The translations under genes and the position numbers were made by a program. A stretch of 64,000 nt of DNA from Rebecca billardiae RCC1528 (Eukaryota; Protista; Haptophyta), in NCBI GenBank assembly GCA_965240325.2, contig OZ251232.1, forward strand, positions 682,001 through 746,000. The letters run 5' to 3'. The notes beneath the pieces are model-generated. The model did not search any database. It was not told where the DNA came from and saw nothing but the letters and a program-made list of their open reading frames with translations. Shown here piece by piece: positions 16,910 through 42,018 of the stretch; the first letter of the stretch is position 1, and each line of letters begins with the position of its first letter.

Positions 16910-17233
16910 CTAGCGCCACTCGATAGCCTTGTTGATGTGGTAGGCCGCCGAGACGCAGCCAATGGTGGCAATCATGCCAGCGGGGAACACCTTGCCCGTA
17001 GACAGCGTGCGAATCCCCATCGACGCGCCGAGCACGCTCCCGAGCACGCCTGCCGCACCGTGCCCTTCAAACTCAGCCGAGTTGTCGATCGCATTGCCAG
17101 AGGCGATGTAGCCCGCGCCGAAGCTCAGGCCTGCGATGAGCGACGCGCGAGAGCCCTTTCGGAAGTATCCCATGAGACCGCCGGCGATCATCACCACGCC
17201 CACCGCGTAGGCCGGATGCGCCTGGCCAGTCAT
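16910..17233 (-). CDS. TMEM14/FAX family small membrane protein
   Basis: HPAYAVGVVMIAGGLMGYFRKGSRASLIAGLSFG and GKVFPAG are characteristic; 107 aa. Confidence 0.88.
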   Translation of the reverse strand: MTGQAHPAYAVGVVMIAGGLMGYFRKGSRASLIAGLSFGAGYIASGNAIDNSAEFEGHGAAGVLGSVLGASMGIRTLSTGKVFPAGMIATIGCVSAAYHINKAIEWR

Positions 17234-17483: not shown

Positions 17484-20400
17484 TCAGTCCGACTTGGCAT
17501 GGCTTGCTGCTGCCTGCGCGCCGCCGTCGCTGGTACGGTCTGCGGCGTAATCAGTGCCGCCCGTGGCATCTGCGTCAGCGTGGCGCCGGTGCACAGCGAC
17601 AGTGGCAGTGCTGCTGCCGTCGTCGCCGGCACGCGCCCGCCACTTGACGCGCGCGTCGCCAGAGTCGTCACCGGCCGTGCCGCCGCCCGCGGCGTCAGCC
17701 CCGGGGCGCGGCGGAGCGTCGAGGTCACACAGCCGCTCGGCGAGCGAGCCCGACCAGAGCATGTGCCCGGGCAGCACCTCGTGCTTGAGCACGAGCGTGA
17801 GCGGCGTGATGGCGCAGCCGGCCGAGACGACCGCGCCCGCCTGCGCGAGCGAGCGCGGGCCGACGCACACCGCGCCCTCGCCGATGCGCACGCGGCTGTG
17901 CCGCATCGCGCCGTGGTCCACCACGTGCGGGAAGATGAGGACACCGTCTGCCAGCACAGAGCGCGCGCCCAGCTCGATGCTCTCCTGCTCCACCGGCGGC
18001 GGCACGTCGACGTAGGCCGACGCGGGCTCGGCCACCGACGCGCCGAGCGCGCGCCAGAGCAGCGTCATGAGCTCGGTGCCTGCGCGCGCGCGCGGGCGCG
18101 CGGTGGCGTGAGGGTGCGCGAGCGTGCGCGCGCGCAGGCCACGGGCGGCCGCACGGGGCGGCGCGCGCCTCGCCGCGTGCGCGCGCGCACGGCGCAGGCG
18201 CCTCCCGCGCGCACACCTCCGATCAGGTCTGTGGGGATGTGCGCGTGCAGCAGGCCCAGGATGGACCACACCGCGCGGTGCGTGCCGTGCAGCGAGTGCT
18301 CGCCCTGCGTGCAGCGCAGCGGGCACGGCGTGGCGCGCGCGCGCGCGCGACGCAAGTCAGCCGGCCGCGCGCGAAACCTCGCCCGCGCCGCGCCCGCTGC
18401 GGCGGCGCGCAGGCGCGCGCGGCCGGAGCGCGCCGCGCTGGCCGGGGGGCCGCGCGCACCGTGAAGCGCACGCCGGTGAGCGCGCGCAGGCCGAGCACTG
18501 CCGCGAGCAGCGCGCCCACCGCGAGCGCATACGCGAGGGCGATGCCGAGCGTGAGCGGCACCATCGCCACCGCCGCCCCGTGCGCGCCGTGCCGCGCCAG
18601 CGCGGGGCCGAGCACGGCGGGTGCGCCCAGCACGGCAAGCAGCCCCGGCGTGAGCCAGGTGCCCAGTGTGAGCAGCTGCGCGCCGCCGCCGGCGCAGAGC
18701 GTGAGGAGGAGCACGCGCCACGAGCCGCCGCCGTCGGCGGGCGGCGCGGCCGCGAGGCCGGGCTCCGCAGCGCCCCGGCCGCGCGACAGCCGCTCCAGCG
18801 TCTCAAAGTGCGACTGGCGAGATGCGCGCGAGATGCGCGCGAGATGCGCGCGCGATGCGGCGGCGGGCGGGCGCCGGGGGGGGGGGCGTCGGCGCGTGAG
18901 AGCGGGCGGCGCGTGCGCACCCAGGCCGCGCGCGGCGGCGCCTCTCCCCCGCCGCTGCTGGCGCGGCGGCGGCGCGGCGCCGAGCCCAATCTCGGCGCCA
19001 TCTCGGCGCCATCTCGGCGCCATCTCGGCGCCATCTCGGCGCCATCTCGCTCGCGCGGCACCGGCCCGGGCGGTGCGGCGCACCTTGAGACCGGAGTCGA
19101 GCAGCCGCGCCGGACTGCCCACCCAGGTGGAGCGCGCGGCGAGCGCGCGGCGCGCGGACACGGCGGTGAGCGAGCCCACAGTGACGTCGACGTCGGTCGC
19201 GGTGCCGGCGAGCATGTGCGCGTGCTCGGCAAGGAGCGTGCGCGCGCCCACGCGCACGGGCGCGCGCAGCGTGAGCGCGCCGCCGCCCCCGTCCTCCGCG
19301 CGTCCGCCGGGCGCGTCCGCGTCCGCGCCGCGCGCCTCGGCCGCGTCCGCCGCGCGCGTCGGCAGGAGCACCGCCCCCCAGCCCAGCCAGGCGTCGTCGC
19401 TGATCTCGACGAGGTCGGCGTCGGCGCCGACGAGCGTGCTCGCGATGAAGGCGCGCGCGCCGACGCGCGCGCCGAGCGCGCGGCTTAGCGCGCGGCTGAG
19501 CGCGCCGCCTCCGCCCACGTACGCGGCCATGGGCGCCGAGGTGCACAGCGCGTCGACCGCCCACGCGCACACCGCCTCGCGCGCCGACGGCCGGCGCACG
19601 CCCGCCCGCGCCTGCGCGCACAGCAGCCGCTTCGCGCCGACGGCGAGCAGAACGTAGGCGGCCCTCGACAGCAGCTGCCCGCACACGAGCCGGAGCGCGG
19701 AGGGCGGCGCGCGCGCGAGCAGCAGCAGCGAGGGCGAGGCGGACGCGGCGTGCGCGAGCAGCAGCGCGAGGTGCGCGAGGGCGAGCAGCGCGCACGCCGG
19801 CGGCGCGGGCCGCACATGCGCGCGCGCGGCCGCCGAGCGGCGTGGCGCGTCGTCAGGCGCGTCGGCGTCTGCGCGGACGTTCGCGTCGGCGTCCGCGTCG
19901 GCGACGGCGCGCGCGGGCGCGCCCGCCACGTGCGCGCCCGGCGGCACCGCCGTGCCCGCGAGCGCGTGCGACAGCGGCGCGACGGACGCGCCGGCGCCGA
20001 CGCGCGCGCCCGCGCTGAGCACGCTGCCCGGCCCGACCGCGGCGCGCGCGCCGACCGCCACCGCGTCGAAGCGCACGAGCACGCCGCCCTGCGCCGCGAC
20101 GAACCGATGCGCGAGCACGCACACGTCCCGGCCGAGGCGCGCGCCTTCGCCCAGCTCGAGCAGCTCGGGGTCGTCGATCAGCGCGGTGTCCACGATGGCG
20201 CCCGCGCCGAGCCGCGCGCCGCACAGCCGCCAGAGCGCGGCGCACAGCGGCCCGCCGCGCACCACCGACGCCCAGTGCTTCAGCGGCAGCAGCAGCCGGC
20301 CGGCGAGCCACCACCGAGCGAACGGCCACGACCACAGCCGCAGTGCCGACCCCGGGCGCAGCGGAGGCCGCACCAGCCTGCGCGCGGCCGCGCACAGCAG

Positions 20401-23400
20401 CACGACGCACAGCGCGTTCGCGCCGTGCATCGGCGGCAGCAGGCACAGCGCCCACCACAGCGGCCGCGTGCGCGCCACGTGCACGCTCGCCGCGTACAAC
20501 GGGATCGCACCCGCCGCGTGCACACAGAAGGCACACAGCGCGCACGCAAGCTGCACCGCTCGGCGCGCGGCCGGCCGCATCGGCGGCGCGAGTGTGGCGA
20601 GCTCGGCCGGCGGCGGCGGCGCGAAGGCCGCGCGCCGCTCCGCCGCCGCGGCGGCGTCCGCCGCGCCCGCGCCGTCCGCGCCCACCGCCGCGCCCGCGCG
20701 CGCCGCGCCCGCCTCCGCCACGCGCTGCGCGACGCGCGCGGCCAGCTCGCGCACGGTGTCCGCCGCGGCAATCTCAGCCAGGCTGAGCGCGATGCCGTAG
20801 TGGCGGCGCAGCGTGCCGAGCAGCTGCATCCGGCGGAAGGAGTCGGCGCCCACCGCCTCGCTGAGCGAGTCGAGCGGCGAGAGGCGCGGGCCGCCGCCGC
20901 CGCCGCCGCGCACGCCTGCGCCGCCGCCGCCATCCGCACCGCGCTCGGTGCGCTGCGCGCCGGTCAGCGCGCGCTCTGCGGGCGGCAGCGCGGGCGGCGC
21001 GGGCTCGGCGGGCTCGGCGGGCTCGGCGGTCTGGATGTCGAGGTCGGCCGCGAGCAGCCGCAGGAGGTGCGCCTCGAGCTCGGACGCGGCGGGCGCGCCC
21101 TCGGGGCTGCCTGCGCCCGGCGCGCCCCCCGCCTCCGCCTCGTCGCCGCCTCCCAGCCCGCCCTCCGCCGCGGCCAGCGCCTCAGCACATTCGCCAAGGT
21201 CGGCGTCGGCGCGCGCCGTCGCGCGCGCCGCGTCGGCGCGCGCGCGCCGCCGTCCGCGCGCGTCCGCGCCGTGCGCGTCCGCGCCGTGCGGCGGCCCGTC
21301 CGGCGTGAGCAGGTGCAGGCTGCCGTCGGGCATCAGCTGCCCCACCCAGCCCGTGCGCACACACACGCCGTAGTCCGCGTCGTCGTCGCGCACGAGTGGG
21401 TTGGAGGTGAGGGCGGGAGCGCACGCGCTCGGCTCAGAGGCGCCGGGCGGCGCCGACGCGGGCGGCGGCGGCGGCGGCGAGGCGGCCGCCGCGCTGGGAT
21501 CGGCGGCGGCGCCGGCCGCGCCCGGCGCGTCGCGCTCGCGCGCGCCCTCGCCGCCCGCCGCCGCCCGCTGCTGCCCCCCCCCCACCCGCGCCCGCCGCCG
21601 CTCCCCCCACGCCCTGCGCAGCTGCACACTCGCGACGTGAACAAATCCGGCCGCGCCGCTCGGCACCGGCCTGCCAAACCCGTCGAGGACGTACACGCAC
21701 ACGCCGGGGAGCGCGCGGCCCGCGCAGCCGGCGGAGACGTGCGTGCGCTCCGCCTCGTCCGCCTCGGCGCCGAGGTCCGCCGCCGCGGCGAGCGAGGCGA
21801 GCGGCGCGCGCCACACGCCGACCAGGCTCGCGCCGCGCGCGCGCCAGCGCGCGCACGCGTGCGCCGGCGGCCGCCCTTCGACCCAGAGTCGCTCCACGGC
21901 GGGCAGCGCCTCGGGGGCGAGCGCGGCGGCGGCGCGCGCGCGCAGCGAGAGCCAGCGCGCGCCGTGCGCGCGCGCGTGCGCGCACAGCGCCTCGGCGCCG
22001 CACGCCGCGCGCGCCGCCTCCGACTCGTGCACGAGCGCGCTCGCGCCGCGCGCGAGCGCCGCGGCCGCCATCTCGATGAAGGGCAGCGAGGGCCAGGCGT
22101 GAGCGAGCAGGGCGCACGCGTACTCGGAGGCGTCGGCGGCGTCGGCGGCGGGCGCGCGCGCCGCGCCGCGCATCGGGAGCAGCTGCCGGCAGTTGCGCGC
22201 GGCGTTGCCCAGCGCGGCGTGCGTGACGCAGTGCCACGCGCCCCGCTGCCACAGCCGCAGCGCGGGCGCGCGCGGCGCGGGCGGCCGCACGCGCGCCGCC
22301 TCCGCTCCGAGCGGCGCGGCGGCCCCGCTGCCCTGCGCGCCCGCGAGCAGGCTGCCATCCGGCGAGAGCTCGAGCGTGCAGCCCGGGGGCGCGCCCCCTC
22401 CGCCGCCGTCGCCGTCGGCCGCGGCCGCAGCCGCCGTCTGGCGCACGCGCAACAGCGCAGCGCCGGGCGGCTGCGCGCGCGACAGCGCGTCCGCCCGCGG
22501 CTCGTCCTCGCCCCGCGGCCCCGCCGCGCCCTCGGCGCGCGGCTCGCTCGCGCGCGGTGGCCCGCCGCCCAGCTGCACGACGCAGCCCGCGCGCAGCACG
22601 CCGAGCAGGCCGACCAGCCCGGCGCCGGCCGAGCGCGCTTCGAGCGCCACGACCGGCGGGGTGGCGGCGCCGTCGGCCGCGTCGCCGCCGTCGGCCGCGA
22701 CGCCGCCGCCGCCGGCGGGCTCGGCCCCAGAGCCCACGGGCGGCGCCGTGCCGCTCGGCGCGCGCGAGCCGAGCGCGGCGCGCACCGCGGCGGCGAGCGC
22801 GTTCGCGCGCGCGTCGAGCTGCGCGTAGCTCAGCGCGAGCGCGGCACCGCCCGGCCCGGCTCCGTGCGCGCGCGCGAGCACGATCACAGCGCTGCGCTCG
22901 CCCGCGGCGCGCGCCTCCGCCGCGTCGGGCGCGTCGGGCGCGTCGACGCACGCGGCGCGCGCCCATGGCAGCGCGCCGACCGCGCACGCCTCGGGCGCCA
23001 CCGGCCTGTGCGCGGCCGCGGCCGCCGCCATCGCCTCGGCGGGCTGCAGCAGCGGCTGGCGCAGCAGCGGGCGCGACGGCCGCTCCGCCACCGCTCGCAG
23101 CAGCGTGACGTAATGGCCCGCCATGCGCCGCATCACGCGCGCGTCGTACAGCTCCTGGTGGAACTCGAGCGAGCCCGAGGCGCGGCCGTCGGCGTGCATC
23201 TTGAGCTCGAGCTTGAGCTCCAGGTCGAAGCCGTTGCGCACGCTCGGCGCCTCCACGGGCTGCGCGGCCAGCCCGGGCGCCGTTTCGTACCGCCACTGCT
23301 CCACGTTGAAGTAGATCACGCGGCCGCGCCGCGCGCTGCCGCGCCGCCAGCCGTCGAGCAGCCGTGCGAAGAAGGGGGACGAGTGCTCGAGCCCGAAGAG

Positions 23401-24232
23401 CACGGCGGCGTGCACGCGGCGCACGAGCTCCGCAAAGTCCGTGCGCGGGCCCACGGCGCCGTCGACGCACAGCAGGTTGGTGACGAACCCGACGACGGCC
23501 GCCTCCGCGTCGGTGCGCTCGTTGCACGCAATCAGGCACGCGGCCGGCGCGCCGCGCGGCGAGAGGTAGCGCGAGACGAGGCCGAGGAAGGCCGCGAGCA
23601 GCGTCGTGTTGAGCGTCGCGCCCGCCGCCGCGCCGAGCGCGCGCACGCGCGCGAGCAGCGCGCGGTCGATCTCGAGCGGCGCCTGCCCGATCAGCTTGCG
23701 CGCGGCCTCGGACGCGGCACGCTCCTCCGCGGACGCGCCCGCGGGCGGCGCTGGCTTCTCGAGGGCGAGCTTGAGCTCGGGCAGCGGCAGCCCAGCCTCG
23801 CCGTACCGGCGGCGCCACGCGTCCCACTGGCCCGGGAAGCCGGCGCGCATCTCCGCCGCCTGCCGCGCGATGTAGCTCGCGTAGTCCACGCGCTGGTGCT
23901 CGAGCGCCCCGAGCGCCGCCTCGAGCGCGGCGTCCGCCTCCGCGCCCGCGTCGCGCCCCGCCGCCGCCGCCGCCGCCGCCGCCGCCATCATCGCGCGGTA
24001 CAGCGCCCAGAGCTCGTCGAAGAGAATCGAGACCGAGCCTCCGTCGTCGATCAGGTGGTGCAGGTTGAGCAGCAGCACGTGGTGCTGCGCGCCGAGCACG
24101 AGCAGCCGCGCGCGGAAGAGCGGGCCCTCGAACGGGTCCATGGGCAGCGCCGCCTCCTGCGCGTACGCGCGCGCCTCCGCCGCCGAGCGCGGACCGTCCG
24201 CGGACGCGGCGCGCGCGCCGCCGTCGTCGCCC

Positions 24233-24264
<32 letters not shown>

Positions 24265-27200
24265 CTCCGCGCTGAGGTCGTCCACGCGCAGCCACGCCTC
24301 GCGCGGGTACTCGGCCGCGTGCGGCGCCCACTGGTGCCACGTGTGCTTGTCGAAGCGCGTGCGCAGCTGCGCGTGCCGCCCGACCAGCGCCTCCAGGCCG
24401 CGCAGCAGCAGCGGCGCGCGCAGCGGCCCGAGCAGGCGCGTCGGCACGAGGTAGCCGTATGTGAGCTCGCCCTCCTGCTCGAGCATCTCGCGCACCGTCT
24501 GCAGCAGGTAGTACTGCTGCACCGACGGCGGCATCAACGGCTGCGCGCACCAGCCGGACGCGGCCGCGGACCCGCCGCCGCCACCCGCGCCGCCGGGCGG
24601 CGGAGCGCTCGGGCCGTCCGCGCGCGCGAGCGCGCCGCCGCCGGCCGGCCCGGCGGCGCTCGCGGCGACGGCCATCTCCGGGAGCGGCGGCGGCCGGCCG
24701 TCCGCGCCCGCCGCGCCGCGCGCGCCGCCCCAGATCGCCGCCCTCGCGCGCGCGGCCGTCGGCAGGTAGGGCCTCGCGGCCGCGCTCGCGCTGTGAGCCG
24801 GGTCGCCGGGCGCGGAGCGGAAGCGCTGCAGCGGCGGCAGCGGCGCGGCGGCGGCGGCGGCGGCACGTCGGCCGAGCGCGGCCGCCGAGTCGGCCGCGCT
24901 CCCGCCCGCCGACGCCGCGCCCCCGCCGTTTTGCAGCGCGCCCGCCGCGCCGCCGCCGCCGCCGTCGGCGCCGCCCCAGCGCGCGCCCGCGCTGCTCGCG
25001 CCGCCGTCCGAGGCCGCGGCCGAGCTGGGCGCGCGGACGAGGGCGACGACGGCGGAGTCGAGGCTGCTCTCGCGCGCGGCGAGCGGCGGCGGCGTGGCGG
25101 TCGGCTGGGACGCCGCCGAGCCGCCGCCGCCCGCCGCCGCCGCCGCCTCCGCCGCCGCGCGCGCCGCCGCCGCCGCCTCCTCCGCCGCCTCCGCCTCGGC
25201 CGCGTGCGCGTGCACAAACGCCGCGAGCGCGGACACGGAGTTGAGCGAGCCGCGGAGGACTGCGCGCATGGTGAGCGCAGTGCCGCACCGGCTGTTGAGC
25301 GCGCGCACGAGGGAGACCACGCCGAGCGAGTCGATGCCGAGCTGCACGAGCGTGCGCTCGGCGGGCGCGCCGCCGCCGGCCGCGCCCGCGCCCGCCGCCG
25401 CGGGCGCGCCGGCCGCCGCCGCGGCGCGGTCGTCAGCGCCACCGGCCTCGGCCGCGGCCGCGGGGGCGGCCGCGCCGCCATCCAGCTCGGCGCCGAGGTC
25501 GACATCGACCGGCAGCACCTGCGCGACGAGCGCGCTCACGAGCGCGTGCGCGTCCGCGAGCGAGCGCACGCTCTGCGCCGGCGGCAGCTCCCGCGCGCGC
25601 TCGCCGCCGGCCGCGGCGCGCTCGCCGGCCGCCGCGAGCGTGCCGCCGCCGCCGCCGTCGCCCCCAGCGGCGCGCCGCCCGGAGGCGCCGCCGCCGCCGC
25701 CGCCGCCGCCATCCGGTGGGCCGACGGCTGGCCAGGGGAAGCGCTGGCGCCGCCACTTCACCGGCTCAGCGTCCGCGTCCGCCTCGCTCCCGCGCGCGAA
25801 CGCGGGCACCCACTCCGCCTCGTCGCCATCGTGCCCGCCGGCGGCGGCGCCGAGCGCTGCCGCGTGCGCGTGCGCGTGCGCGTGCGCGTGCGCGAGTGCC
25901 TCGCCGCCGTCAGACTCGTGCGCGCCGCCCTCCGACGCGGCGTCGGCGTGCTCGGCGTCGGGCGCGCCGCCGTCCGCGCCGCCAGGCCCGCCGTGCTCGG
26001 GCGCGCTCAGCACCAGGTGCACGTTCGTGCCGCCCAGCCCGAAGCTGCTCAGGCCGATGTGCAGGGCAGAGCGCTCGGCGGCCGCGGCGGCCGCGCGCGC
26101 GCGCGCGGCCGCCGACGCGCCGCGCACGCGCACGCCGCCCTCGTGCAGCGCGTCGACGGCGGCGCTAAAGGCCGCGTCGGCGGGCTCGGCCTTGTCGAGC
26201 AGCGGCACGAGCAGCGGGCACGCGCCGCGCTCGCCCTCGAAGATCCGCCTCGCCATGTTGCACAGCGTCGGGTGCGGTCCGAGCTCGACACACACGCTCG
26301 CCCCCGCGCGCAGCAGCTCGCGCGCCGCGCCCTCAAAGTGCACGGGCTCGATGACGTGGCGCACCCAGTGCGACGGCTCGTGCGCCGCGCCGCACGCCTC
26401 CCAGCCGTCCGCGCCGCGCACGCACGAGACGAGCCGCGGACCCGCGCCGCGCGCGCGCGCAAAGCCGGCCGCGGCGGCCGCCGCGGCCGCGGCCGCGGGC
26501 GCGCGCCACTCGACGCGCCGCGCCGCCTCGGCAAAGGGCGCGAGCACCGGCGCCATCAGCGGCGAGTGGAACGCGTGCGAGACGTTGAGGAGGCGGTGCT
26601 TGGCGCCGACGCGCTCGACGAGCGCGCCGACCGCGCGCTCCGCGCCCGACACCGTCACCGCGCGCGCGCCGTTCACCGCTGCGAGCGAGAGCGCCAGCGG
26701 CGGCGGCGCGGCGCCGCGCTCGGCGCGCGCGCCCTCCGCCGCCATCGCCTCGATCGCCGCGCGCACCTCGGCGGCGGGCGCGAAGATGGCCGCCATCGCG
26801 CCGCCGGCGGGCAGCGCGTCGATCAGCTTGCACCGCGTGAGCACGAGCCGCACCGCGTCCGCCACGCCCAGCACGCCCGCCACCACCGCCGCCACGTACT
26901 CGCCCAGCGAGTGGCCGCACACAAGGTCGGGCACGCACCCGCGCGCCGCCAGCGCGCGCGCGAGGGCGTACTCGAGGGCGAAGAGGGCGGGCTGCGTGTA
27001 CCGCGTGCTGTCGAGGAGCGGCGGCGGCGGCGCGTGCGCCGCGGCGGCGGCGGCGGGCGCGGCGGCGGGCGGCGCGCTCGGCCCGCGCCGCGCCGCCCGC
27101 GCGGCGTCGCCCTCGTCCGCCCTGGGCGGCCCCTGGGCGCCCGCCTCCTCCTCCTCCTCATAGCCCAGCAGCTGCGTGAGGCGCACACCCTCGCCCAGGG

Positions 27201-28767
27201 CGCGCATCGCCGCGTCGCACTCGGCGATCGCCGCGCGGAAGGCCGGGTCCGTCCGGTGCAGCGCGCGGCCCATGCCCACGTGCTGCGTGCCCTGCCCGGG
27301 GAAGAGCCACGCGACGAGCGGCCGAGCTGCGCCCGCGCCCGCGCGCGGCAGCCGCGTCACGCGCGTCGGGAACTCGACCAGAGGGGGCGGCGAGGCGGCG
27401 CCCGCGCCGCCGCCGCCGCCGGCGGCTCCGTCGGCGTGCGTTGGCGGCTCGTCGGCCGCCACCGCCTCGAGCACGGCGGGCGCGAGCTGCGCCAGCCCGA
27501 CGGTGGGGAGCACCGCGCGCGCGGCCAGCTGCGCGCACACCTTGAGCAGTGCGGCCACGCCCGCCGCCGCCTCCAGGTTACCCACCGCGCCCTTGGCGGA
27601 GGAGACGAGCAGCGGGCGCGCGCGGCCGGCGCAGCCAAAGACTGCGCCGAGCGCGCCCGCCTCCGCCGCGTCGCCGAGCGCCGTGCCCGTCGCGTTCGCC
27701 TCGACGGCGGCGATCTGTGCGGGCGAGAGCTCTGCCGCGCCGAGCGCGCGGCGCAGCAGCTCCTGCTGCGCCGTGCCCGACGGCGCAATCAGCGTCAGCC
27801 CGTGCCCGTTGTGCCCGACCGCGCGCGCGCGCAGCGTGGCGAGCGCTCGGCCGCCCGCGCCGCCCGCGCCGCCCGCGCCGCCCGCGCCGCGCCGCAGCAC
27901 GAACAGCCCACAGCCCTCGGCGCGCACGTACCCGTCCCCGCGCGCGTCAAAGGGCAGCGCGCGCTCGGCGCGCGAGAGCAGCCCGAGCCCGCACAGCTCG
28001 GTGTACCGGCGCGGGTGCAGCAGCAGGTTCACGCCGCCCGCGAGCGCGAGCGCGCACCCACCGCCGTGCGCGCCGCCGCCGTGCTCGAGCGCGGAGGCGG
28101 CCAGGTCGAGCGCCACCGCCGTCGAGGAACACGCCGTGTCGACCGCCAGCGACGGCCCGTCGAGGCCGAGCGCGTAGGAGATGCGGTTGGCGCCGATCGA
28201 GGGCGTCTGGCCGAGCAGCGAGTGCGCGCCCACCGCCGCCCCGCCGTCCCGGCACACCTCCGCCCAGTCCGAGTTGCACAGGCCCACGAGCACGGCCGCG
28301 CGCGCGCCGCGCAGCTCGGCGCGTGCGTAGCCCGCGCGCGCCAGCGCCTCGACTGCGCACTCGAGCAGCAGGCGGTGTGCCGGGTCGACCGCGCCCGCCT
28401 CGAGCGGCGAGAGGCCGAACGCGCCCGCGTCGAAGCACTCCGCCGTGTCCGCGTCGAGAAAGTGGCCGGCGCGCGCGTACGCGAGCCCGGCGCCGCCGCC
28501 GTCGGCGCCGCCGCCGTCCGCGGCCGCGCGCGCCGCCCACGCGTCCGCGTCCCAGCGCGAGGGCGGCGCGGGCCCGAGCCCGCTCGGCGCGTGCGCGCTG
28601 AACGCGCGCCACGCGCCCTTCAGGCTGCGCACGCCGCCCGGCAGCCGCACGGCGTACCCGACGATCTGAACGGCAGAGCCGCCGCCCGGCGCGCCCGCGC
28701 CTCCGCCCGCCGCGGCGCGGCGCGCGAGGCTGTGCGCCGGCTCGGTGGCGGGGAGTGGCGCGGGCGC

Positions 28768-28799
<32 letters not shown>

Positions 28800-30544
28800 G
28801 GCCGAGCCTCCGCTCGAGGAATGCGCACAGCGCCCGGGGCGTGGGGTGGTCGAAGATGGCTGCCGCGGGCACGCTCACGCCCAGCCTCGCGCGCAGCAGC
28901 GTGCGCAGCTCGATCAGAGCGAGCGAGTCGAGCCCGCCCTCGGCGAAGGTGGCGTCGGCGTCGAGCGGCGCACCGGTGAGCTCGGCAACCGCCGCGCGCA
29001 GGGACTCGGCCACGCCCCCCGCGGCGGCGGCGGCGGGCGGCTCGGCTCGGCTCGCGGCCTCGGCCGCGTCGGCCGCGCCGCCGCGCGCGCGCGCGCCCTC
29101 GCCGCCTCGTCCGTCCACCGCCGCGAAGCGCGCGAGCCTCGGCCGGCCGCGCGTGTACGCGGCCCAGTCGACGTGCGCGACCGCCACGCCGTGCAGCCCG
29201 TCGTCGAGCGCGGCGCCCAGAGCGCCGAGCATCAGCTCGGGCGCGACGGCGCCGAGGCCGCGCCGCGCCAGCGCAACATCCGCGCCGGTGCGCGCGCCCA
29301 TGCCGACGTGTGACACGGCGCCCAGCTGGAGCGAGCACGCCGGCAGGCCGGCGTCGGCGCGCGCGCCCGCGAGCGCGTCCAGCGCCGCGTTGGCTGCCGA
29401 GTAGTTGGCCTGGCCGGGCGCGCCGAGCGTCGAGGACACGGATGAGACCAGGACAAAGGCCGAGAGCTCGAGGCGGCAGCTCAGGCTGGCGGCGTGCCAC
29501 AGGTAGGCGCCGTGCGCCTTGGCGCCCCACACCGCCGACATCGACGCGCTGTCCTGCGCGCCCAGCGTGCCGTCCGCCAGCACGCCCGCCGCGTGCACGA
29601 TGCCCCGCACCGGCGGCGCGGCCGGCTTCGCGGCGCGCGCCGTCGCCAGCGCGGCGCGCACGTCGGCGGCGCGCGCGCAGTCGCAGCGGGCGTGCAGCAC
29701 GCGCGCGCCCGAGCGCGCCAGCCGCGCCCAGTCCGCCTCCGAGCCCGCAGGCACGCGCCCCGAGCGCGAGGCAAGCAGCACGCAGCGCACGCCCACGCTC
29801 TCGACCAGCCAGCACGCGATGCGCAGACCGAGGCCGCCCGTGCCGCCTGACACCACCCACGTGCCCGCGGCGCCGCTCTCGCGCCACGCGCGCGCGCCGA
29901 CGTGACCGCCGCCGTCCCCGCCGCTGGGCGCGGCGGCGGGCGCGCCGAGCGCGCGCGCCGGCCGGCACGGCACGAGCCGCGCGCACCACAGCTCACCCCC
30001 CCGCTCGGCCAACTCATGCTCGGCGAGCGCGCGCGTGGCCACACCCGCAGGCGTGCCCGCCGCGCCGCCCGGCGCCTCCGCGCGCGCCTCGAGCAGCGCG
30101 AGAGCGCGCAGCAGCGTGGCCGGCCGCACGGCGGCGGCGCGCGAATCGTCACCGTCACCGCCGTCGCCACCGCCGTCACCGCCGCCGCCGCCGCCGCCAC
30201 GGCCGCGGGGCGGCAGCTCGAGGTCGAGCGCGGCGGCGCGCAGCTCGGGCACCTCGGCGCGCGCCGAGCGGAGGAGGCCCCACGCGCCCCCGTGCAGCGC
30301 GCTCGAAGCGGAGCACGGCGCACGCGCGGCCGGCCCGGCGGGCGCGGCGGCGCGCACGCGCTGCGTGCCCGCGGTGAGGACGAGCAGCGGAGGCGGGCGC
30401 GGCGCGCCGCCGCCCTCGGCCGCGAGCGCGCCCTCCGCGAGCGCCTGCACGAGCCTCAGCAGCTCCTGCGCGCACAGCAGCGAGCACCGCGCGGCCGCCT
30501 CGTCCGCCTCCGCCTCGGCCTCCGCCTCCGCCTCGGCAGCGTCC

Positions 30545-36400: not shown

Positions 36401-39400
36401 ACGCCGGGGAAAGGCCGCCCCACGCTCGCCGCGAACTCGAGCCGCCCCGCGCCGTCCCGCGCGCGCACGTCCGGCGCGCGCGGCATGGAAGTGCAGATCT
36501 TGCCGCAGCACTCGGTCATGCCGTAGGAGACGAAGAAGTGGCCGTCGGTCGGGCAGGGGGCGTGCTGCCCGGCGGGGGAGCGCGCGGCGCGTGCGGCGCG
36601 GCCGCGGCCGACGACGCCCGTCAGCGCCGCGCGCACGTGCGCGGGCGCGAGCCCCGAGCCGCCGCACGAGAGCAGCCGCAGCGAGGCGAACGAGGCGGCG
36701 GCCGCCTCGGGCCGTGCGAGCAGCATTGCAAGCATCGTGGAGGCGAGGTTGGTCACGCTGACGCCGTGCGCGTCGATGGCGGCCGCGGCGCGGCCCGCGT
36801 CCCAGCGCGCCTGCACGACGTGCACGCCGCACACCGCCGTCGCCGCGTACACCCCGAACGCGTCAACCAGGTGGAAGATCGGCGCGAAGTGCCCCCACAC
36901 GTCCGAGGCGCCGAAGCCAAACTCCGCGAGCGCCGCGTGCGCGTGGGCGAGCACGGCCGCGCCCGAGAGGCACACGCCCTTCGGGAAGCCCGTGGTGCCC
37001 GAGGTGTAGTAGAGCGCGCACGGGCGCGCGCGCGCGTCGCGCGGCGCCGCGCGCCAGCGCAGCGCCGCCGCGCCGCCGCGCGCGCCCTCCTCCAGCGCGC
37101 CCTCGAGCTCGAGCGCGCGGAACGGGCGGCGCGCGGCCGCGTCGGCCGCCGCCTCGGCCGCGGCCGACTCGCGCGCGCCGCCGTGGCTCGCGATCCACAC
37201 GACGACGCGCGGGCCGCGCCAGGGCGGCGGCCGCGCGGCCGCGCCCGCGCGCGCCGCCGCCTCCGCCAGCCCCGCCGCCTCCGCCGCGCCGCCGCCCTCC
37301 GCCGCGAGCACGTCCAGCGCAGCGCGCAGCAGCGGCGCGTGCTCTGTGTGCGCGAGCAGCAGTGCGGGCGCGCTGTCTGCGAGGATGAACGCCAGCTCGG
37401 CGGGGGCGAGGCGCGGGTTGAGGTTGAGCAAGGTGCAGCGCGCGAGCGAGGCGGCAAAGTGCGCCTCGAGCACCTCGAGGGAGTTGGCGCAGAGCACGCC
37501 CACGCGCGGCGGCTCGTCGGCGGCGGCGGCGGCGGCGGGGGCAGTGTCGGCGGCGGCGGCGGCATCGGCGCAGGGTGGCTCGGAGGCCGGGGCGGGCTCG
37601 GTGGGGGCAGGGAGCGGGGCGCACGGCGCGTCGGCGCGCGGCGCCAGTGGCGGCGGCGCGGAGCACAGCGCGCGCATCCCAAAGTCGACGCCTTCCGACG
37701 CGGCCGCACCCGCGGCCGCGGCCGCGCCCGCCCCACCCGCGCCCGCGCCACCCGCGCCCGCGCCGTGCGCGTGCGCGTGCGCGTGCGCGTGCGCGTGCGC
37801 GTGCGCGTGCGCGTGCGCGTGCGCGTGCGCGTGCGTGGCCAGGAATCCGCCGAGGCACGCGGCGCGCGCCCACAGCTGCGCGTAGCTGGCCTCGCGGCCG
37901 TCGTCGCACACCACGCCGAGCGCGTCGGGCGCGCGCGCCGCCGCGCGCCGCAGCAGCGCCCACGCCTCCGCCTCGAGCGTGTGCGCGCGCCGCGCCGAGC
38001 GCAGCGGCCGCAGCAGTGCGCACGGCGGCGGCGCGCTCGGCGCGGCGCGGCGCGGCGGGGCGTGCGGCGGCGGCGGCGGCGGCGGCGGCGGGCAGTGGAT
38101 GAGGAGAGCGGTGACGCGCGCGCGCTCGCCGTCGGCCGCGCCCCCCACCGCGCCCTCCACCGCGTCGCTCAACGCCGCCTCCGCCTCCGCAGCCGTCGCG
38201 CACAGCCGCAGCGCCACGCACCGCGCGAGCGCGCCGCGCCGCAGCCTGGCCGCGAGGGCGCGCACGCGTGTGGGCTGACTGATCAGCAGCAGCAGCACGA
38301 CGTGCGGCGGCGGCGGCGGGGCGTCGTCGTGCGTGCGGGGGCGCGACACGTCGGCCGCGCGGGCGGCAGGCGTCGCCAACTCGCCGCCGCCTTTCCCCCC
38401 ACCTGCACCGCCGCCTTCGCCGCCGCCGCCGCCTGCGCCGAGCCCGCCGCCGCCTGCGCCGAGCCCGCCGCCGCCTGCGCCGAGCCCGCCGCCGCCTGCG
38501 CCGAGCCCGCCGCCGCCTGCGCCGAGCCCGCCGCCGCCTGCGCCGAGCCCGCCGCCGGCCAGCAGAGCGAGCAGCTCCGCGCCGCCCGCCGCGAGCTCCG
38601 GCTCGGAGAGCAGCGCAAAGGCGGGCGCGCCGCGCCGCGAGAGCGCCGCGCCGAGGGCGAGCGCCAGCGGCTGCGTCGGCGCAGCCGAGCGCGGCGCGCG
38701 CTCGCAGCCGAGCACGCACACGCCCGCGCGCACGCGCGCCGCGGCCGCGACCGCGCGCGCCGCGCGGCTCTCGCCGACGACGAGGGCGCTGCTCGGCGCG
38801 CACGCGCGCTGCAGCGCCGCCGCCAGCTGCGCCGGGCGCACGCCGCGCGCCGCGCCGCCGGCGTCCGCGCCGGCGTCCGCCACCGCCGCCGAGCTCGGCT
38901 CCGCGCCGCCGCCGCCGCCGCCATCGCCGCCGCCCAGCTGCAGCGCGCGCCGCCACGCGCGCTGCCGCTCCGCGCCCGCGTCGGCCGCGCCCGCGGTGGC
39001 GCGCACCGCGCTAAGCAGCGCGCGGACAAAGGCGCCCTCGTCGGCGCAGACGGGCGTGCCGCCGAGGTTGGCGCACGGCACGCGCGAGTCCGCGTGCACG
39101 TGCACCAGCGCGTGCGGCGCGATCGCCGTGGGCAGCGCCGCGCGCGCGCCCACCGCGCGCCCGGCCGCGCACCCGATCACCAGAACCGCATCGCACGCGC
39201 CGCGCGCGCGGCAGAGCGTTGCGCGCTCGGCGCGCGGCGCCGAGCCGTCGGCGAGGTCGAGGGACGAGGCGGCGCTGAGCACGGGCAGCGGCGCGGGCGG
39301 CGCGCCCTCCGCGCCGCGCACGCCCTCGGCCGCGCACGCCCCGCCCGCCCCGCGCGCGCCACCGCCGACACCGCCCGGCGCGTCCTCGTCCAGCGCGCCG

Positions 39401-42018
39401 CGGCCGTCCGGCGCCGCAAGGAGCACGGCGCCGAGGGAGGCGCTGAGCGCGGCGAGCTCGTGCGCACACGCGCCGAGCGCGCCGCGGCCGAGGAGGAGGA
39501 GCGGCAGCCGCGAGTCGCACAGCGCCGCGCGCGCGCGCTCCACGTCGTCGGCGCGCGGCTGCGTGCGCGTGAGCGCGCGAGCGTCGCACACCGTGCGCGC
39601 CGTGCGCGCCGTGCGCGCCGCCAAGCGGCGCGCGCCGTCGGCCGCGGCCGGCGCGCCCGCGGACGCGGACGCGCTCGCGGCCGCCGCCGACGTGGCGCTC
39701 GACGCGGCGGCGGCGAGGGCCGCCGCGGGCGCGACGAGCAGCGCGGGCCTGCGCGCGCGCGCGGCCGCGCGCGCCGCCTCCTCCAGCCCCCGCGCGCACG
39801 CCTGCCCACCGCAGCACTCGTCGAGCTCGGCCGTGTACGCGCACACCGCCGCAAGCGCACTCAGGCGCTCGTCGCGCGCGCGGCGCGTGAGCGCGGCGGC
39901 CGCGGCCGCGGCGTGGGCGGTGGCGGCGGTGGCGGGTGCGGGCGAGGGTGCGGGCGAGGGTGCGGCGTCGGAGGGGGCGGGGGCGTGCGCGCCCGCCGCG
40001 CTCGGCGCCTCGCCGTGCGCGAGCACGAGCAGCAGAGGCACGCCCGCCGCGGCGGCATGCGCGAGCGCGCGCGCCGCCTCCGCCCACGCCGCTGAGCCGG
40101 CGCCGCCGAGCGCGCCCAGCTCTGCAGCGCAGGGCAGCACGGCGCACGCCGCGCGGCCCCACGGGGCGGCGGCCGCGGCGCCGACGGCGACGCGCGCGGC
40201 GCAGCCCGCGGGCGCGTGCACGCGCACCAGCGCCGCGGGCAGCCGCGCCGCCGGCGCGAGCGCGCCCAGCGGCGGCGGCGGCGGCGTCGACGCACCATCG
40301 GCCGCGCCGGCCGCGCGCGCGCCGGCCGGCAGCCACAGCGCGGCGCTCAGCGGCGCGGCGCGCAGCCCGGCGTGCAGTGCGCTCTCCGCCGCGCCCGGCG
40401 GCGGCTCGGGGCCCGCCGCCGAGGCAGCGGCGGCGGCGTCGCGGCCGCCGCCCTCCCGACAGCGCAGCAGCACGCACACGCCCGGCCGCCGCTGCCCCGC
40501 GCCGCCATTCGGCCGCGACGGCGCAAGCGCCGCGCGCGCGCCGTCCGCGCTCGCAAGCTCGAGGCCGGCGGCTGGGCACGCGGCCTCGAGCGCCGCCGCC
40601 GTCGCATCGCCGTCCGCGCCGGGCGGCAGCACGGCGCAGAGCAGCACGGGCGCACGCGCCGCCGCGAGCGCGCCATGCACATCCGGCCCGAGCTCGCACA
40701 GCCGCGCCGCGTCGCACACGGCGACAACGGGCGGCGGCGCGGCGCAGTGCGGCGGCGGCGCGGCGCAGTGCGGCGGCGGCGCGGCGCAGTGCGGCGGCGG
40801 CGCGGCGCAGTGCGGCGGCGGCGCGCGCGCGGCGCCGCCGTCCGCGCGAGCAGCCGAGCCGAGCGCGTGCGCGAGCGCGCGCGCGCACGCCGAGGGCGCC
40901 CGCGCCGGGCACAGCACGGCGGGCGCGCTCGCGGCGCGGCGGCCGGCGGCAGCGCCCGCTTCGCCCGGCTCGAGCGCGCCGTGCTCACCCGCCGCACCCT
41001 CGGGCTCGGCCGCCGCCGCCGCCAGCACCGCTTCGACCGCCGCATCGACAAACACGCGCGCGCCCTCGCCGCACGCGCGGCCGAGCGCGAGCCGCAGCGC
41101 GCGCGCCGAGGCGTCGTCGAGCGCGACGGGCGTGGGCTCGGCGTCCTCGCCAGCACGCCGCGCCGCCGCGCCCGCCGCGCCGCCCGGCGTCGGCGCCGCC
41201 AGCCCCGGCGCCGCCGGCGCCGCGCGCTCAGCAATCAGCACGTCCACAGCTCGGCGCGTGGCCGCCGCCAGCTCGGCCGGCAGCGCGGGCGTGTGCACGC
41301 GCGCCGCCGCGTGCGGCGCGGGGCTGCGATGGGGCGGGAGCGGCCCCACGCCTCCCTCCGGCACGCGCACGTACCCCGCCAGCACGTCCGACGGCACCTC
41401 GACCGCCACCGGCCCCGCCGGGTGCGCGCGCGCCAGCCGCGCCGCTCGCAGCAGCTCAGACGGGAGCGCGTCCGCGCGCGGCGGCGCGAGCCACTCCTTG
41501 AGCGTGGGCGCGAGCAGCGCGTGCGCCTCGAACTCGCCGGGCTGGTGGTACGGCGCGTCGGCCGTCGGGTCCGCCCAGCAGCCCTCGACGCCGTCGCGCT
41601 CGCCGTCGGGCGCCGCCGCCGATGCCGGCGCAGGCTGCTCCACCGGCGCGCCGGCATGGCCGAGCACGTCGATGCCCTCGACGAGGAGGAGGAGCGGCAC
41701 GTGCGCGTCGAACGCGCGCACGAGCGCGGGCGCCAGCTCGCCGAGCGCCGCGCCCGCGCGCACGCACGCGCACACGAGCCCTCGGTCGTCCGCAGGCCGC
41801 GCCGCGGCTGCCGCGCCGGCGAGCTCGCCAACACCGAGCTCGGTCGCGAGCGGGACGCACGTGGGCAGCGCGGCCTGCAGCGCGGCCCATGTGCGCGGGG
41901 AGTGGCGCGCAGGCACGCCGACGACGAGGTCCACCCCCGCCGCGCGCAGCGTCGCGGCGACGACCGCGTCGGCGCGGTGCTCCGCGCCCGGGCGCAAGGC
42001 GCTCACGGAGGGAGCCAT
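17484..42018 (-). CDS. Giant hybrid PKS-NRPS megasynthase (~7990 aa) with N-terminal ThDP-fold domains and a C-terminal Pls-like membrane domain; predicted introns 18814-19083, 18305-18459, 18080-18216
   Basis: Approximate positions: ThDP-fold x2 38090-41980; A (YYTSGTTGFPKG, YGMTE, FATGDLG, GSGKVRK) 35890-37980; KR (GATGGIG, YAAAN) 33740-35690; ACP x2 (GVDSF) 32820-33420; KS (DTACSSS, HGSGT, GHLEG) 31410-32775; KR (GGTGGLG, YSAAN) 29160-30970; ACP (GLDSL) 28810-29010; KS0 26005-28672 containing AT (FPGQG, GHSLG, HAFH) 26130-27310; ACP (GIDSL) 25210-25550; C (HHLIDDG) 23060-24530; degenerate A 21310-23000; carrier (GADSF) 20740-21070; TM plus hexapeptide-repeat terminal region 17700-20560. 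The spliced length of 23973 nt is a whole number of codons. Confidence 0.92.
18819..19049. repeat. Two oppositely oriented 11-bp tandem arrays inside a megasynthase intron
   Basis: (GAGATGCGCGC)x3+ at 18819-18858 and (ATCTCGGCGCC)x5+ at 18989-19049. Confidence 0.85.
32820..33420 (-). repeat. Near-identical tandem ACP duplication (offset 351 bp)
   Basis: The two ~250-bp ACP-coding copies encode an identical ACP core, with only about three synonymous differences visible. Confidence 0.9.
37763..37834. repeat. Coding (GCGTGC)n hexamer repeat giving a poly(His-Ala) insert in the A domain
   Basis: Seen directly. A shorter copy lies at ~25862-25892. Confidence 0.9.
38425..38557. repeat. Coding 21-bp tandem repeat (GGGLGAG x~6)
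   Basis: CCGCCGCCGCCTGCGCCGAGC is repeated. A second 21-bp array (PPPHCAA x4) lies at ~40730-40822. Confidence 0.85.

What the first reader, a model, noticed from the sequence alone, without database searches (positions are those of the whole stretch)
17484..20560. Pls/PosA-type membrane terminal domain in place of a thioesterase
Seen: three repeats of hydrophobic helices followed by hexapeptide-like beta-helix segments. Examples are PGSALRLWSWPFARWWL...LWRLCGARLGAGAIVDTALIDDPELLELGEGARLG, LSRALGARVGARAFI...DADLVEISDDAWLG, and LWRALGASV...EQESIELGARSVL...VRIGEGAVCVGPRS. Known: this layout matches the NRPS terminal domain (TIGR02353) of bacterial epsilon-poly-L-lysine synthetase, which polymerises carrier-bound monomers at the membrane, normally after a simple A-T. 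Inference: here it offloads or polymerises a PKS-derived monomer. The only introns I can detect in the gene are in this region, which hints at a separate origin.
Basis: partly seen in the sequence, partly recalled or inferred. Interest (0 to 1): 0.8.

Follow-up and report, generated by a model that had tools for sequence, protein, structure and literature searches.

The report
Membrane acyltransferase end on algal megasynthase
A giant polyketide/peptide synthase gene of a GC-rich alga really does end, instead of in the usual release enzyme, in a membrane-embedded domain related to bacterial polylysine synthetase, but it belongs to an unstudied side branch of that family that caps multi-step assembly lines, so it most likely releases the finished chain at a membrane rather than making a polylysine-like polymer.

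Summary
The last ~1,000 codons of the minus-strand megasynthase gene (17484-20655) encode three pairs of hydrophobic helices, each followed by a left-handed beta-helix. They are collinear with the Pls/PosA terminal domain (TIGR02353: E 6e-30 and 4e-17; my own profile: E 1e-57 and 8e-17). Three GT-AG introns interrupt the third repeat; homology across the junctions and GC3 periodicity support them. No RNA run was listed.

It is not a canonical Pls/PosA domain. It scores below the curated cutoff and lacks the near-invariant motifs (E[IV]S, F[IV]GN, QTHLFEDR). It falls in a supported variant clade (0.93) whose other members cap multi-module NRPSs (A-T-C-A-T-term, C-A-T-term). It keeps the invariant C3 histidine and has a second one in C1.

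The A domain just upstream is a dead relic, the C and T domains look intact, and the ORF has no TE or R domain. My best reading is a membrane-bound chain-release acyltransferase. Polymerisation is possible but unsupported.

Only one other PKS with such an end turned up (Coccomyxa COCSUDRAFT_47508, different clade), and I found no paper on it. The scan had already noted a separate one-module Pls-type gene elsewhere in this genome (s1-341019). Verdict: new variant of a known kind.

The parts
23035..23883 (-). Condensation (C) domain of the last module, with an intact HHLIDDG motif
   Evidence: Pfam PF00668, E 8e-13 on this piece and 2.6e-25 on the larger piece. The motif was read directly in the translation.
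20911..22863 (-). Relic adenylation domain: the fold order is kept but the catalytic core motifs are lost
   Evidence: Pfam AMP-binding scores only 18.9 bits (cutoff 29.9), covering profile positions 220-378. In the profile alignment A5 NxYGPTE is GVWRAPL. By direct reading the A3 P-loop is replaced by LWQRGAWHCVTH, A7 is VRTGW, and there is no A10 GK.
20731..20886 (-). Last carrier (T/PCP) domain with the GADS serine
   Evidence: Pfam PP-binding E 5e-8. It aligns to the family's LGGHS motif.
20371..20574 (-). TM1-TM2 helical hairpin
   Evidence: AlphaFold2 helices 28-63 and 66-95 of exon A, hydropathy peaks, profile positions 70-135.
19894..20370 (-). C1: conserved PG..LRLWSWPFARWW and GARLG motifs plus the first left-handed beta-helix. 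It holds a clade-typical His at codon 20109-20107.
   Evidence: Profile alignment, AF2 beta-helix at residues 166-250, His column. This region is 59% identical to an environmental ortholog fragment, L004.
19621..19803 (-). TM3-TM4 helical hairpin
   Evidence: AF2 helices 285-314 and 320-345, hydropathy.
19084..19620 (-). C2: second beta-helix with an Ala/Asp-rich loop insertion. Its motifs are FIS / WLAD / LLAE in place of the canonical E[IV]S / F[IV]AD / F[IV]GN. Exon A ends at AAG|GT.
   Evidence: splice donor read.
18802..19083 (-). Intron 1: 282 nt, GT..AG, in frame and stop-free, so the ORF reads through it
   Evidence: In-frame GC3 is 0.81 against 0.95 in the flanking exons. It holds two 11-nt tandem arrays, at 18989-19049 (100% matches) and 18817-18859. 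The junction is not verifiable by homology because the linker is variable.
18472..18801 (-). Exon B: linker plus the TM5-TM6 hairpin
   Evidence: GC3 0.945, two hydrophobic stretches at aa 43-69 and 75-105, weak profile match at positions 580-607, aligned with relatives.
18305..18471 (-). Intron 2: 167 nt, GTGCGC..GCAG, shifts the frame
   Evidence: The B/C junction gives ..TGGEHSLHG.., matching ..AGGQHDLYS.. and ..SSGDHQLHS.. in the nearest relatives.
18217..18304 (-). Exon C: 88 nt, GEHSLHGTHRAVWSILGLLHAHIPTDLIG, the pre-C3 helices
   Evidence: It aligns to P0010 GDHQLHS-THILVW and P0021 GQHDLYS-GHMLLW. GC3 0.93.
18080..18216 (-). Intron 3: 137 nt, GTGTGC..GCAG
   Evidence: Splicing restores the family's conserved G-T (LIGG|TELMTLLWRALGA against LLLGTPFLALVLRLLGA).
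17733..18079 (-). Exon D, catalytic part = C3: third beta-helix with PPVE and FPHVVDHG. The invariant His is at codon 17927-17925.
   Evidence: Own profile E 8e-17, TIGR02353 E 4e-17, AF2 pLDDT 94.8, GC3 0.97, His invariant in alignment A3.
17484..17732 (-). Low-complexity C-terminal tail and the TGA stop (17484-17486). The true 3' end is uncertain.
   Evidence: GC3 falls to 0.76. A donor-like CT|GTGTGA lies near 17735.

Best explanation
The gene's 3' end encodes a catalytically competent but non-canonical member of the Pls/PosA superfamily. Six membrane helices carry three fused left-handed beta-helix units that presumably pack as a pseudo-trimer. The domain takes the place of a thioesterase. 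It receives the thioester-bound product from the last carrier domain and transfers the acyl or peptidyl group to a nucleophile (an amine or a hydroxyl) at or in a membrane, which releases the chain. A histidine acts as general base. The candidates are the family-invariant His in C3 (codon 17927-17925) and a clade-typical His in C1 (codon 20109-20107). Shown here: the homology, the three-repeat topology, the fold, the exon structure, the clade placement, the retention of both histidines, the absence of any other release domain, and the dead adjacent A domain. Inferred: that the domain is active, that it performs chain release, and the chemistry. The chemistry is inferred from two things I know from the literature but did not test: Pls uses T-bound lysine as donor and free lysine or polymer as acceptor (Yamanaka et al. 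2008), and hexapeptide acyltransferases move acyl groups from thioesters to O or N nucleophiles. Unknown: the acceptor, the membrane, and what loads the last T domain.
For: The region is collinear with TIGR02353 and with my own profile. AF2 models have pLDDT 87.6 and 94.8 and show helical hairpins plus beta-helices. The best PDB matches are maltose, galactoside and serine O-acetyltransferases and GlmU. The family His is invariant in 51/51 C3 sequences and is kept here. It lies in the segment that aligns with the His-containing loop of galactoside acetyltransferase. Pfam finds no TE or R domain in the 8114-aa ORF. The nearest relatives are the ends of TE-less multi-module NRPSs: P0006, P0178 and P0179 are A-T-C-A-T-term with only a PPTase gene next door, P0180 is three C-A-T modules plus term, and P0010 is C-A-T-term. 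The clade has support 0.93. Codon usage in the exons is strongly coding (GC3 0.93-0.97). An ortholog fragment from another GC-rich organism conserves C1 at 59%, against 44% for the TM helices.
Against: There is no RNA or protein evidence. The acidic and polar residues that are near-invariant in proven polymerases (E432, N483, Q701, E706, D707, R708 in my profile numbering) are replaced. The adjacent A domain is dead, so the substrate on the last T is unknown. dN/dS against the only ortholog fragment is about 0.7 and uninformative at this composition. No member of the variant clade has been studied. The joined three-repeat model was not folded, so the pseudo-trimer is inferred from the PosA model in PMC10522769.
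Confidence: 0.55

Rival explanations
1. The domain works as a true Pls-like polymerase. It repeatedly joins carrier-bound monomers made by the PKS-NRPS line, using their own hydroxyl or amino group as nucleophile, into a polyester or polyamide that is extruded at the membrane.
For: The domain is homologous to proven polymerases. Two KR domains and an A-KR loading module would leave hydroxyl groups on the product. The LbH superfamily includes both O- and N-acyltransferases. The histidine is retained.
Against: The motifs that are near-invariant in over 110 of 150 representatives of the polymerase group are absent. The score is far below the equivalog cutoff. The clade relatives cap multi-module lines, where each turnover costs a whole assembly-line cycle. 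The A domain that would supply a diamino-acid monomer is dead.
Confidence: 0.2
2. The domain has lost catalysis and serves only as a membrane anchor or scaffold for the megasynthase. Release is by hydrolysis or by a separate enzyme.
For: Many residues conserved in the canonical family are lost. The neighbouring A domain and, according to earlier scan notes, the ThDP units and one KS of this gene are degenerate. C2 has a long low-complexity insertion.
Against: The soluble C1 and C3 parts are better conserved than the TM helices: 59% against 44% versus L004, with near-identical PPVE, HVVDHG and IG.GAVVG blocks versus P0021. The same variant motifs recur in intact bacterial NRPSs that have no other release domain. 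Both histidines are kept.
Confidence: 0.15
3. The 3' region is not part of a functional transcript. It is a decaying pseudogene tail or a wrong gene model, and the frame shifts are damage rather than introns.
For: No RNA run was listed. Three frame interruptions fall within 800 nt. The 82-codon tail loses coding periodicity.
Against: Each interruption has GT..AG ends with similar donors (GTGCGC, GTGCGC, GTGTGC). Removing them restores conserved junction motifs (GGEH, GGT) seen in relatives. Exon GC3 is 0.93-0.97 against 0.80-0.81 in the removed pieces. There is no stop in 1,570 nt of exon A.
Confidence: 0.08

Closest known systems
[quoted passage not shown]
   Same: It follows a carrier domain and has six TM helices in three pairs alternating with three hexapeptide beta-helix units. 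It is collinear over the whole ~700-residue domain. There is no TE. The invariant C3 His, the RWW motif and the GAxxG motifs are present.
   Different: Identity is 25-29%. The score is 104 + 62 bits against a cutoff of 423 (a canonical protein scores 873). The motifs are FIS/LLAE/FPHVVDHG in place of E[IV]S/F[IV]GN/QTHLFEDR. It is preceded by PKS modules, a C domain and a dead A domain instead of one active diamino-acid A domain. It has three introns and sits in a different, supported clade.
Unstudied 'HVVD[HN]G' clade: Pseudomonadota MAG NRPS MFH0784194.1 (P0006, A-T-C-A-T-term), P0178/P0179, P0180 (three modules plus term), and environmental P0010 (C-A-T-term), P0021 and P0070
   Same: They share the variant motifs in C2 and C3 and the His in C1. 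All have a C-containing assembly line upstream and no TE. They form one tree clade (0.93), and exon C and exon D match block for block.
   Different: Those lines are pure NRPS with active A domains. None has KS or KR domains; P0070 has a trailing AT. Identity is only 25-37%.
Coccomyxa subellipsoidea C-169 COCSUDRAFT_47508 (P0279)
   Same: It is an algal type I PKS (KS-AT-DH-MT-ER-KR-ACP) that ends in a Pls-type membrane domain instead of a TE.
   Different: It is a single fully reducing module with no C, A or T domains. Its terminal domain falls outside the 25-leaf clade nearest the haptophyte's domain (C3 motif YCHLASHK), so the fusion is probably independent. I found no publication on it.
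Hexapeptide (LbH) acyltransferases: galactoside and maltose O-acetyltransferases, serine acetyltransferase, and LpxA/LpxD (acyl-ACP dependent)
   Same: They share the left-handed beta-helix fold and are the best structural and profile matches. The donor is a thioester. A histidine-bearing loop precedes the V.IG coil.
   Different: Those enzymes are soluble homotrimers of one chain that use CoA or free ACP. Here three diverged copies are fused in one chain, anchored by six TM helices and fed by a covalently attached carrier.
Canonical release domains of PKS-NRPS lines (TE, terminal reductase R, terminal condensation CT)
   Same: They hold the same position after the last carrier domain and have the same presumed task of chain release.
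   Different: The fold and chemistry are unrelated, and none of them is membrane-integral.

Membership tests
Pls/PosA family NRPS (NCBIfam TIGR02353 equivalog; homopoly(amino acid) synthetases) | Three pairs of TM helices alternating with three tandem hexapeptide (C1-C3) units after a T domain | tested here: met
Pls/PosA family NRPS (NCBIfam TIGR02353 equivalog; homopoly(amino acid) synthetases) | Score at or above the curated cutoff (423.1 bits) | tested here: not met
   104.2 and 61.7 bits, with the exons scored apart. Canonical P0001 scores 872.8. Clade relatives score 222-324, also below the cutoff.
Pls/PosA family NRPS (NCBIfam TIGR02353 equivalog; homopoly(amino acid) synthetases) | Near-invariant motifs E[IV]S, F[IV]AD, F[IV]GN (C2) and QTHLFEDR (C3) | tested here: not met
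   The alga has FIS, WLAD, LLAE and FPHVVDHG. Only A-D and the His (plus an Asp one position off) are kept.
Pls/PosA family NRPS (NCBIfam TIGR02353 equivalog; homopoly(amino acid) synthetases) | Single active A domain for a diamino acid directly upstream (A-T-term), with no C domain | tested here: not met
   The A domain is a relic at 18.9 bits with its core motifs lost. A C domain with HHxxxDG and PKS modules lie upstream.
Pls/PosA family NRPS (NCBIfam TIGR02353 equivalog; homopoly(amino acid) synthetases) | Product is an isopeptide-linked cationic homopolymer | not testable with these tools
   This needs chemistry.
Variant 'HVVD[HN]G' clade of the Pls/PosA superfamily (defined provisionally here) | Placement inside the clade in a tree of TM1-C2 columns | tested here: met
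   FastTree support is 0.91 and 0.93 for the 10-leaf clade; sister to P0010 + P0021 at 0.74-0.77.
Variant 'HVVD[HN]G' clade of the Pls/PosA superfamily (defined provisionally here) | Motifs W-x-[AG]-x and x-x-A-E in C2, H-x-V-D-[HN]-G in C3, and a His in the C1 loop | tested here: met
Variant 'HVVD[HN]G' clade of the Pls/PosA superfamily (defined provisionally here) | Caps a multi-module line that contains a C domain and has no TE | tested here: met
   P0021 and P0070 are N-terminally incomplete or different.
Left-handed beta-helix (hexapeptide) acyltransferase superfamily | LbH fold | tested here: met
   AF2 models plus Foldseek and profile hits to MAT, GAT, SAT, GlmU and LpxA.
Left-handed beta-helix (hexapeptide) acyltransferase superfamily | Pfam Hexapep above the gathering score | tested here: not met
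   19.1 bits against a cutoff of 27 for exon A; 11.8 bits for exon D. The fold evidence outweighs this.
Left-handed beta-helix (hexapeptide) acyltransferase superfamily | Trimeric packing with active sites at the subunit interfaces | not tested
   The pseudo-trimer is taken from the PosA model in PMC10522769.

The most novel reading that the evidence does not exclude
The variant Pls/PosA-type domain is a new, membrane-integral class of assembly-line release domain. It has been recruited independently by NRPSs (bacteria and protists) and by PKSs (this haptophyte and Coccomyxa). It couples chain release to acylation of a membrane or extracellular acceptor, or to export or oligomerisation through its six-helix base, and it may have two histidine sites (C1 and C3).
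Probability: 0.4. Interest if true: 0.8.

Novelty: new variant of a known kind. Interest (0 to 1): 0.62.

Why it matters
The ways that polyketide and non-ribosomal peptide lines release their products (TE, R, CT and a few others) decide the shape of the product. They are also the handles used in pathway engineering. A membrane-embedded hexapeptide-acyltransferase terminator would be a further release logic. It would deliver the product directly to a membrane, a lipid, a wall polymer or the outside. The domain recurs at the end of TE-less NRPSs in bacteria and protists and of PKSs in two unrelated algae, so the question can be tested in tractable hosts, for example with the Pseudomonadota two-module NRPS. 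It also shows that the TIGR02353 superfamily is much wider than the cationic homopolymer synthetases studied so far. For algal biology, almost no algal megasynthase has a known product, so knowing where the chain is delivered narrows the search.

Tried and rejected
1. A word-index search for giant (4.4-14 k aa) relatives using the terminal region found none. The first word search was swamped by low-complexity words and gave only four bacterial hits.
2. The RNA run search listed none.
3. A PDB sequence search and Foldseek found no solved Pls/PosA membrane domain, only generic LbH enzymes.
4. dN/dS against the only ortholog fragment (L004) was 0.67-0.73. This is uninformative at GC3 ~0.95 and 53% identity.
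5. I tested whether C, the A relic and T came in together with the terminal domain. They are too diverged (best hit E 3.5e-4 to the P0179 C domain), so I cannot tell.
6. I considered that the downstream TMEM14 ORF might be a further exon. I rejected this as unlikely because it has its own ATG and a different codon bias, but it is not excluded.
7. I considered one large intron from 18471 to 18080 in place of introns 2 and 3. I rejected it because exon C matches the relatives.
8. Literature searches for a Pls-type end on algal PKSs, for TIGR02353 and for COCSUDRAFT_47508 found only a dinoflagellate gene labelled 'NRPS_term_dom, unknown function'.
9. I did not verify the taxon (haptophyte) myself. 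It comes from earlier scan notes.

Full report
SETTING. The window is very GC-rich, 62-85% in 2-kb bins. A single minus-strand ORF, 18223-42567 (8114 codons), dominates it. Pfam gives this order: a weak ThDP-enzyme N domain, AMP-binding plus AMP-binding_C, KR, two PP-binding, KS, KR, PP, KS, AT, PP, Condensation, then a last PP-binding. No thioesterase or reductase is found. Earlier scan notes call the organism a GC-rich haptophyte alga. I did not test that.

- NCBIfam TIGR02353 (Pls/PosA terminal domain) hits the end of the big ORF at E 6e-30 (profile 34-305 of 695). It hits the frame-shifted ORF 17487-18326 at E 4e-17 (profile 582-693).
- tblastn with four bacterial Pls/PosA proteins is collinear: 20655 to 19051, then 18080 to 17748.
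- An exhaustive HMMER search of 1.84 billion representatives with codons 7305-7820 found 1129 relatives at E <= 1e-3.
- A profile I built from 53 canonical A-T-term relatives gives exon A E 1e-57 (positions 55-525 of 770) and exon D E 8e-17 (positions 655-766).
- Hydrophobic pairs lie at the family's TM1/2, TM3/4 and TM5/6 positions.
- AlphaFold2 of exon A with a 98-sequence alignment (pLDDT 87.6, pTM 0.88) shows helical hairpins 28-63/66-95 and 285-314/320-345, each followed by short helices and a beta-helix.
- Exon D folds as a third beta-helix (pLDDT 94.8).
- Foldseek and profile searches of the PDB return only hexapeptide acyltransferases and gamma-carbonic-anhydrase-like proteins. No Pls/PosA membrane domain has been solved.

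GENE MODEL (minus strand).
- Exon A runs continuously from the PKS/NRPS part to 19084 (AAG|GTGCGC).
- Intron 1 is 19083-18802. It is 282 nt, in frame and free of stops, which is why the ORF reads through it. It contains two 11-nt tandem arrays.
- Exon B is 18801-18472 and encodes TM5/TM6.
- Intron 2 is 18471-18305.
- Exon C is 18304-18217.
- Intron 3 is 18216-18080.
- Exon D is 18079-17487, followed by the TGA stop at 17486-17484.

Support for the model comes from four lines.
- All three introns are GT..AG with similar donors.
- In-frame GC3 is 0.93-0.97 in the exons but 0.80-0.81 in the removed pieces. A 40-codon GC3 scan of the whole ORF flags exactly these pieces.
- The B/C junction yields TGGEHSLHG-THRAVW. 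This matches P0021 AGGQHDLYS-GHMLLW and P0010 SSGDHQLHS-THILVW.
- The C/D junction restores the family's conserved G-T before the L..LR.LGA motif.

No RNA run was listed for this stretch, so the junctions remain predictions. The last 82 codons (17732-17487) lose codon periodicity (GC3 0.76), so the true 3' end is uncertain.

They are aa 73-201 near the putative start, a G-rich repeat at 38523-38338, and a short stretch at 35217-35080. Stop codons are so rare in this composition (one per 131-262 codons in the off-frames) that in-frame introns cannot be excluded. The three introns lie inside the third repeat. The T-to-terminal-domain boundary has none.

NOT A CANONICAL Pls/PosA DOMAIN.
- In the 150 best representatives, more than 110 share almost invariant motifs: E[IV]S, F[IV]AD and F[IV]GN in C2, and QTHLFEDR in C3. 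The alga has FIS, WLAD, LLAE and FPHVVDHG.
- The same variant pattern occurs in P0006, a Pseudomonadota MAG protein whose Pfam order is A-T-C-A-T-term. It also occurs in P0178/P0179 (same architecture), P0180 (three C-A-T modules plus term), P0010 (C-A-T-term), P0021, P0149 and P0070 (T-term-AT).
- In FastTree trees of the TM1-C2 columns the alga is sister to P0010 + P0021 (0.74-0.77). It sits inside a 10-leaf clade with support 0.91-0.93. That clade lies inside a variant super-clade (0.989) distinct from the canonical synthetases.
- TIGR02353 scores calibrate this. A canonical protein scores 873 bits, the clade members score 222-324, and the alga scores 104 + 62. The cutoff is 423.
- Other variant branches are eukaryotic: Phalansterium and Diplonema (C-A-T-term), a Goniomonas cluster, chytrids (term followed by a reductase), and Eucalyptus and Marchantia (A-T-term plus a catalase-like domain).

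WHAT FEEDS IT.
- The C domain keeps HHLIDDG, and the last T domain keeps its GADS serine.
- The A domain between them is a relic. Pfam AMP-binding reaches 18.9 bits (cutoff 29.9) over profile positions 220-378 only. The A5 motif NxYGPTE reads GVWRAPL, the P-loop region reads LWQRGAWHCVTH, A7 reads VRTGW, and no A10 lysine motif is visible (direct reading).
- The last carrier therefore cannot be loaded by its own module. Either an amino acid is loaded in trans and N-acylated by the C domain, or the polyketide reaches it by another route. This is unresolved.

HOW IT PROBABLY WORKS.
- From my own knowledge of the literature (Yamanaka et al. 2008; summarised in PMC10522769 and PMC8117764): in Pls the terminal domain uses T-bound lysine as acyl donor and free lysine or polymer as the amine acceptor. 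AlphaFold and RoseTTAFold models of PosA show the three units packing as one pseudo-trimeric beta-helix domain on six bent helices.
- Hexapeptide acyltransferases move acyl groups from thioesters (CoA or ACP) to O or N nucleophiles, with a histidine as base.
- The C3 histidine is invariant in 51 of 51 aligned sequences and is present in the alga (codon 17927-17925). It lies in the segment that aligns with the His-bearing loop of Staphylococcus galactoside O-acetyltransferase. The exact register is ambiguous by a few residues.
- The variant clade, including the alga (codon 20109-20107) and its environmental ortholog, has a histidine at the equivalent C1 position as well. Most canonical proteins do not.
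- There is no TE or R domain, and the clade relatives are also TE-less with only a PPTase next door. The most economical reading is therefore a membrane-bound chain-release acyltransferase.
- Polymerisation of a hydroxyl- or amine-bearing product is chemically possible but has no specific support. The residues that distinguish proven polymerases are gone.

HOW UNUSUAL.
- Among the 154 best representatives, only four have a C domain (P0006, P0010 and P0101 by local phmmer, plus P0078 by Pfam), one has an AT, and none has KS or KR.
- A further search found one PKS with such an end: Coccomyxa subellipsoidea COCSUDRAFT_47508, KS-AT-DH-MT-ER-KR-ACP-term. Its terminal domain falls outside the 25-leaf clade nearest the haptophyte's domain.
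- A 788-nt environmental contig (74.5% GC) encodes a 53-54% identical ortholog fragment.
- I found no paper that describes this domain at the end of a PKS or a multi-module NRPS. A survey of algal PKSs does not mention it. A 2026 preprint lists a dinoflagellate 'NRPS_term_dom' gene as being of unknown function.
- The scan has separately noted an intronless one-module Pls-type gene elsewhere in this genome. I could not compare it.

LIMITS. There is no expression evidence. The acceptor and the product are unknown. The clade is defined from few sequences, many of them environmental. The taxon was not verified.

Noticed in passing
window 20911-22863 (-): The A domain of the last module is a relic: it keeps the domain order but has lost the P-loop, NxYGPTE, the A7 Asp and the A10 Lys. 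The flanking C (HHLIDDG) and T (GADS) domains look intact, so the final carrier must be loaded in trans or by another route.
   Followed up: partly
window 16913-17233 (-): A 107-aa TMEM14-family gene (PF03647, E 1e-19) lies 250 nt downstream of the megasynthase stop on the same strand. Its codon bias differs (GC3 0.81 against 0.945), so it is probably a separate gene.
   Followed up: partly
window 17487-17732 (-): The last 82 codons before the stop lose GC3 periodicity (0.76 against 0.97 just upstream), and a donor-like CT|GTGTGA lies near 17735. The real C-terminus may differ from the ORF end.
   Followed up: partly
window 20107-20109 and 17925-17927 (-): The variant clade has a histidine at the catalytic-loop position in C1 as well as in C3. 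Most canonical Pls/PosA proteins have it only in C3. There may be two active sites in the pseudo-trimer.
   Followed up: partly
window 18989-19049 and 18817-18859: Two near-perfect 11-nt tandem arrays (5.5 and 3.9 copies) lie inside intron 1. Because the ORF reads through, they mimic an 11-residue peptide repeat (RWRRDGAEMAP).
   Followed up: yes
window 41965-42351 (-); also 38338-38523: The GC3 scan marks codons 73-201 of the big ORF as non-coding-like. The true start therefore probably lies downstream of the TTG at 42567. A GGGLGAG repeat at codons 1349-1410 also looks less coding.
   Followed up: no
window 19750-29313 (+): A 3187-codon antisense ORF overlaps the gene. It is a by-product of the extreme GC content, in which stops are rare in all frames, and is not evidence of a gene.
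   Followed up: no
P0279 (Coccomyxa subellipsoidea C-169, COCSUDRAFT_47508): A fully reducing single-module PKS (KS-AT-DH-MT-ER-KR-ACP) also ends in a Pls-type membrane domain. It appears to be undescribed.
   Followed up: partly
L001:7652-11197 (P0070, JGI metagenome 3300045300): Here the Pls-type domain is not terminal: the order is T, membrane domain, then an acyltransferase (PF00698). Fragmented TE, C and A gene calls lie upstream on the same strand.
   Followed up: no
P0048/P0165-P0172 (Eucalyptus), P0098/P0173 (Marchantia MpACOS18), P0014 (Cladochytrium): Land plants carry A-T-Pls-type domain proteins. P0048 (Eucalyptus cluster) has a catalase-like domain after the membrane domain (PF00199). 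P0098 (Marchantia) showed no such hit. A chytrid carries the domain followed by a reductase domain. All seem uncharacterised.
   Followed up: no
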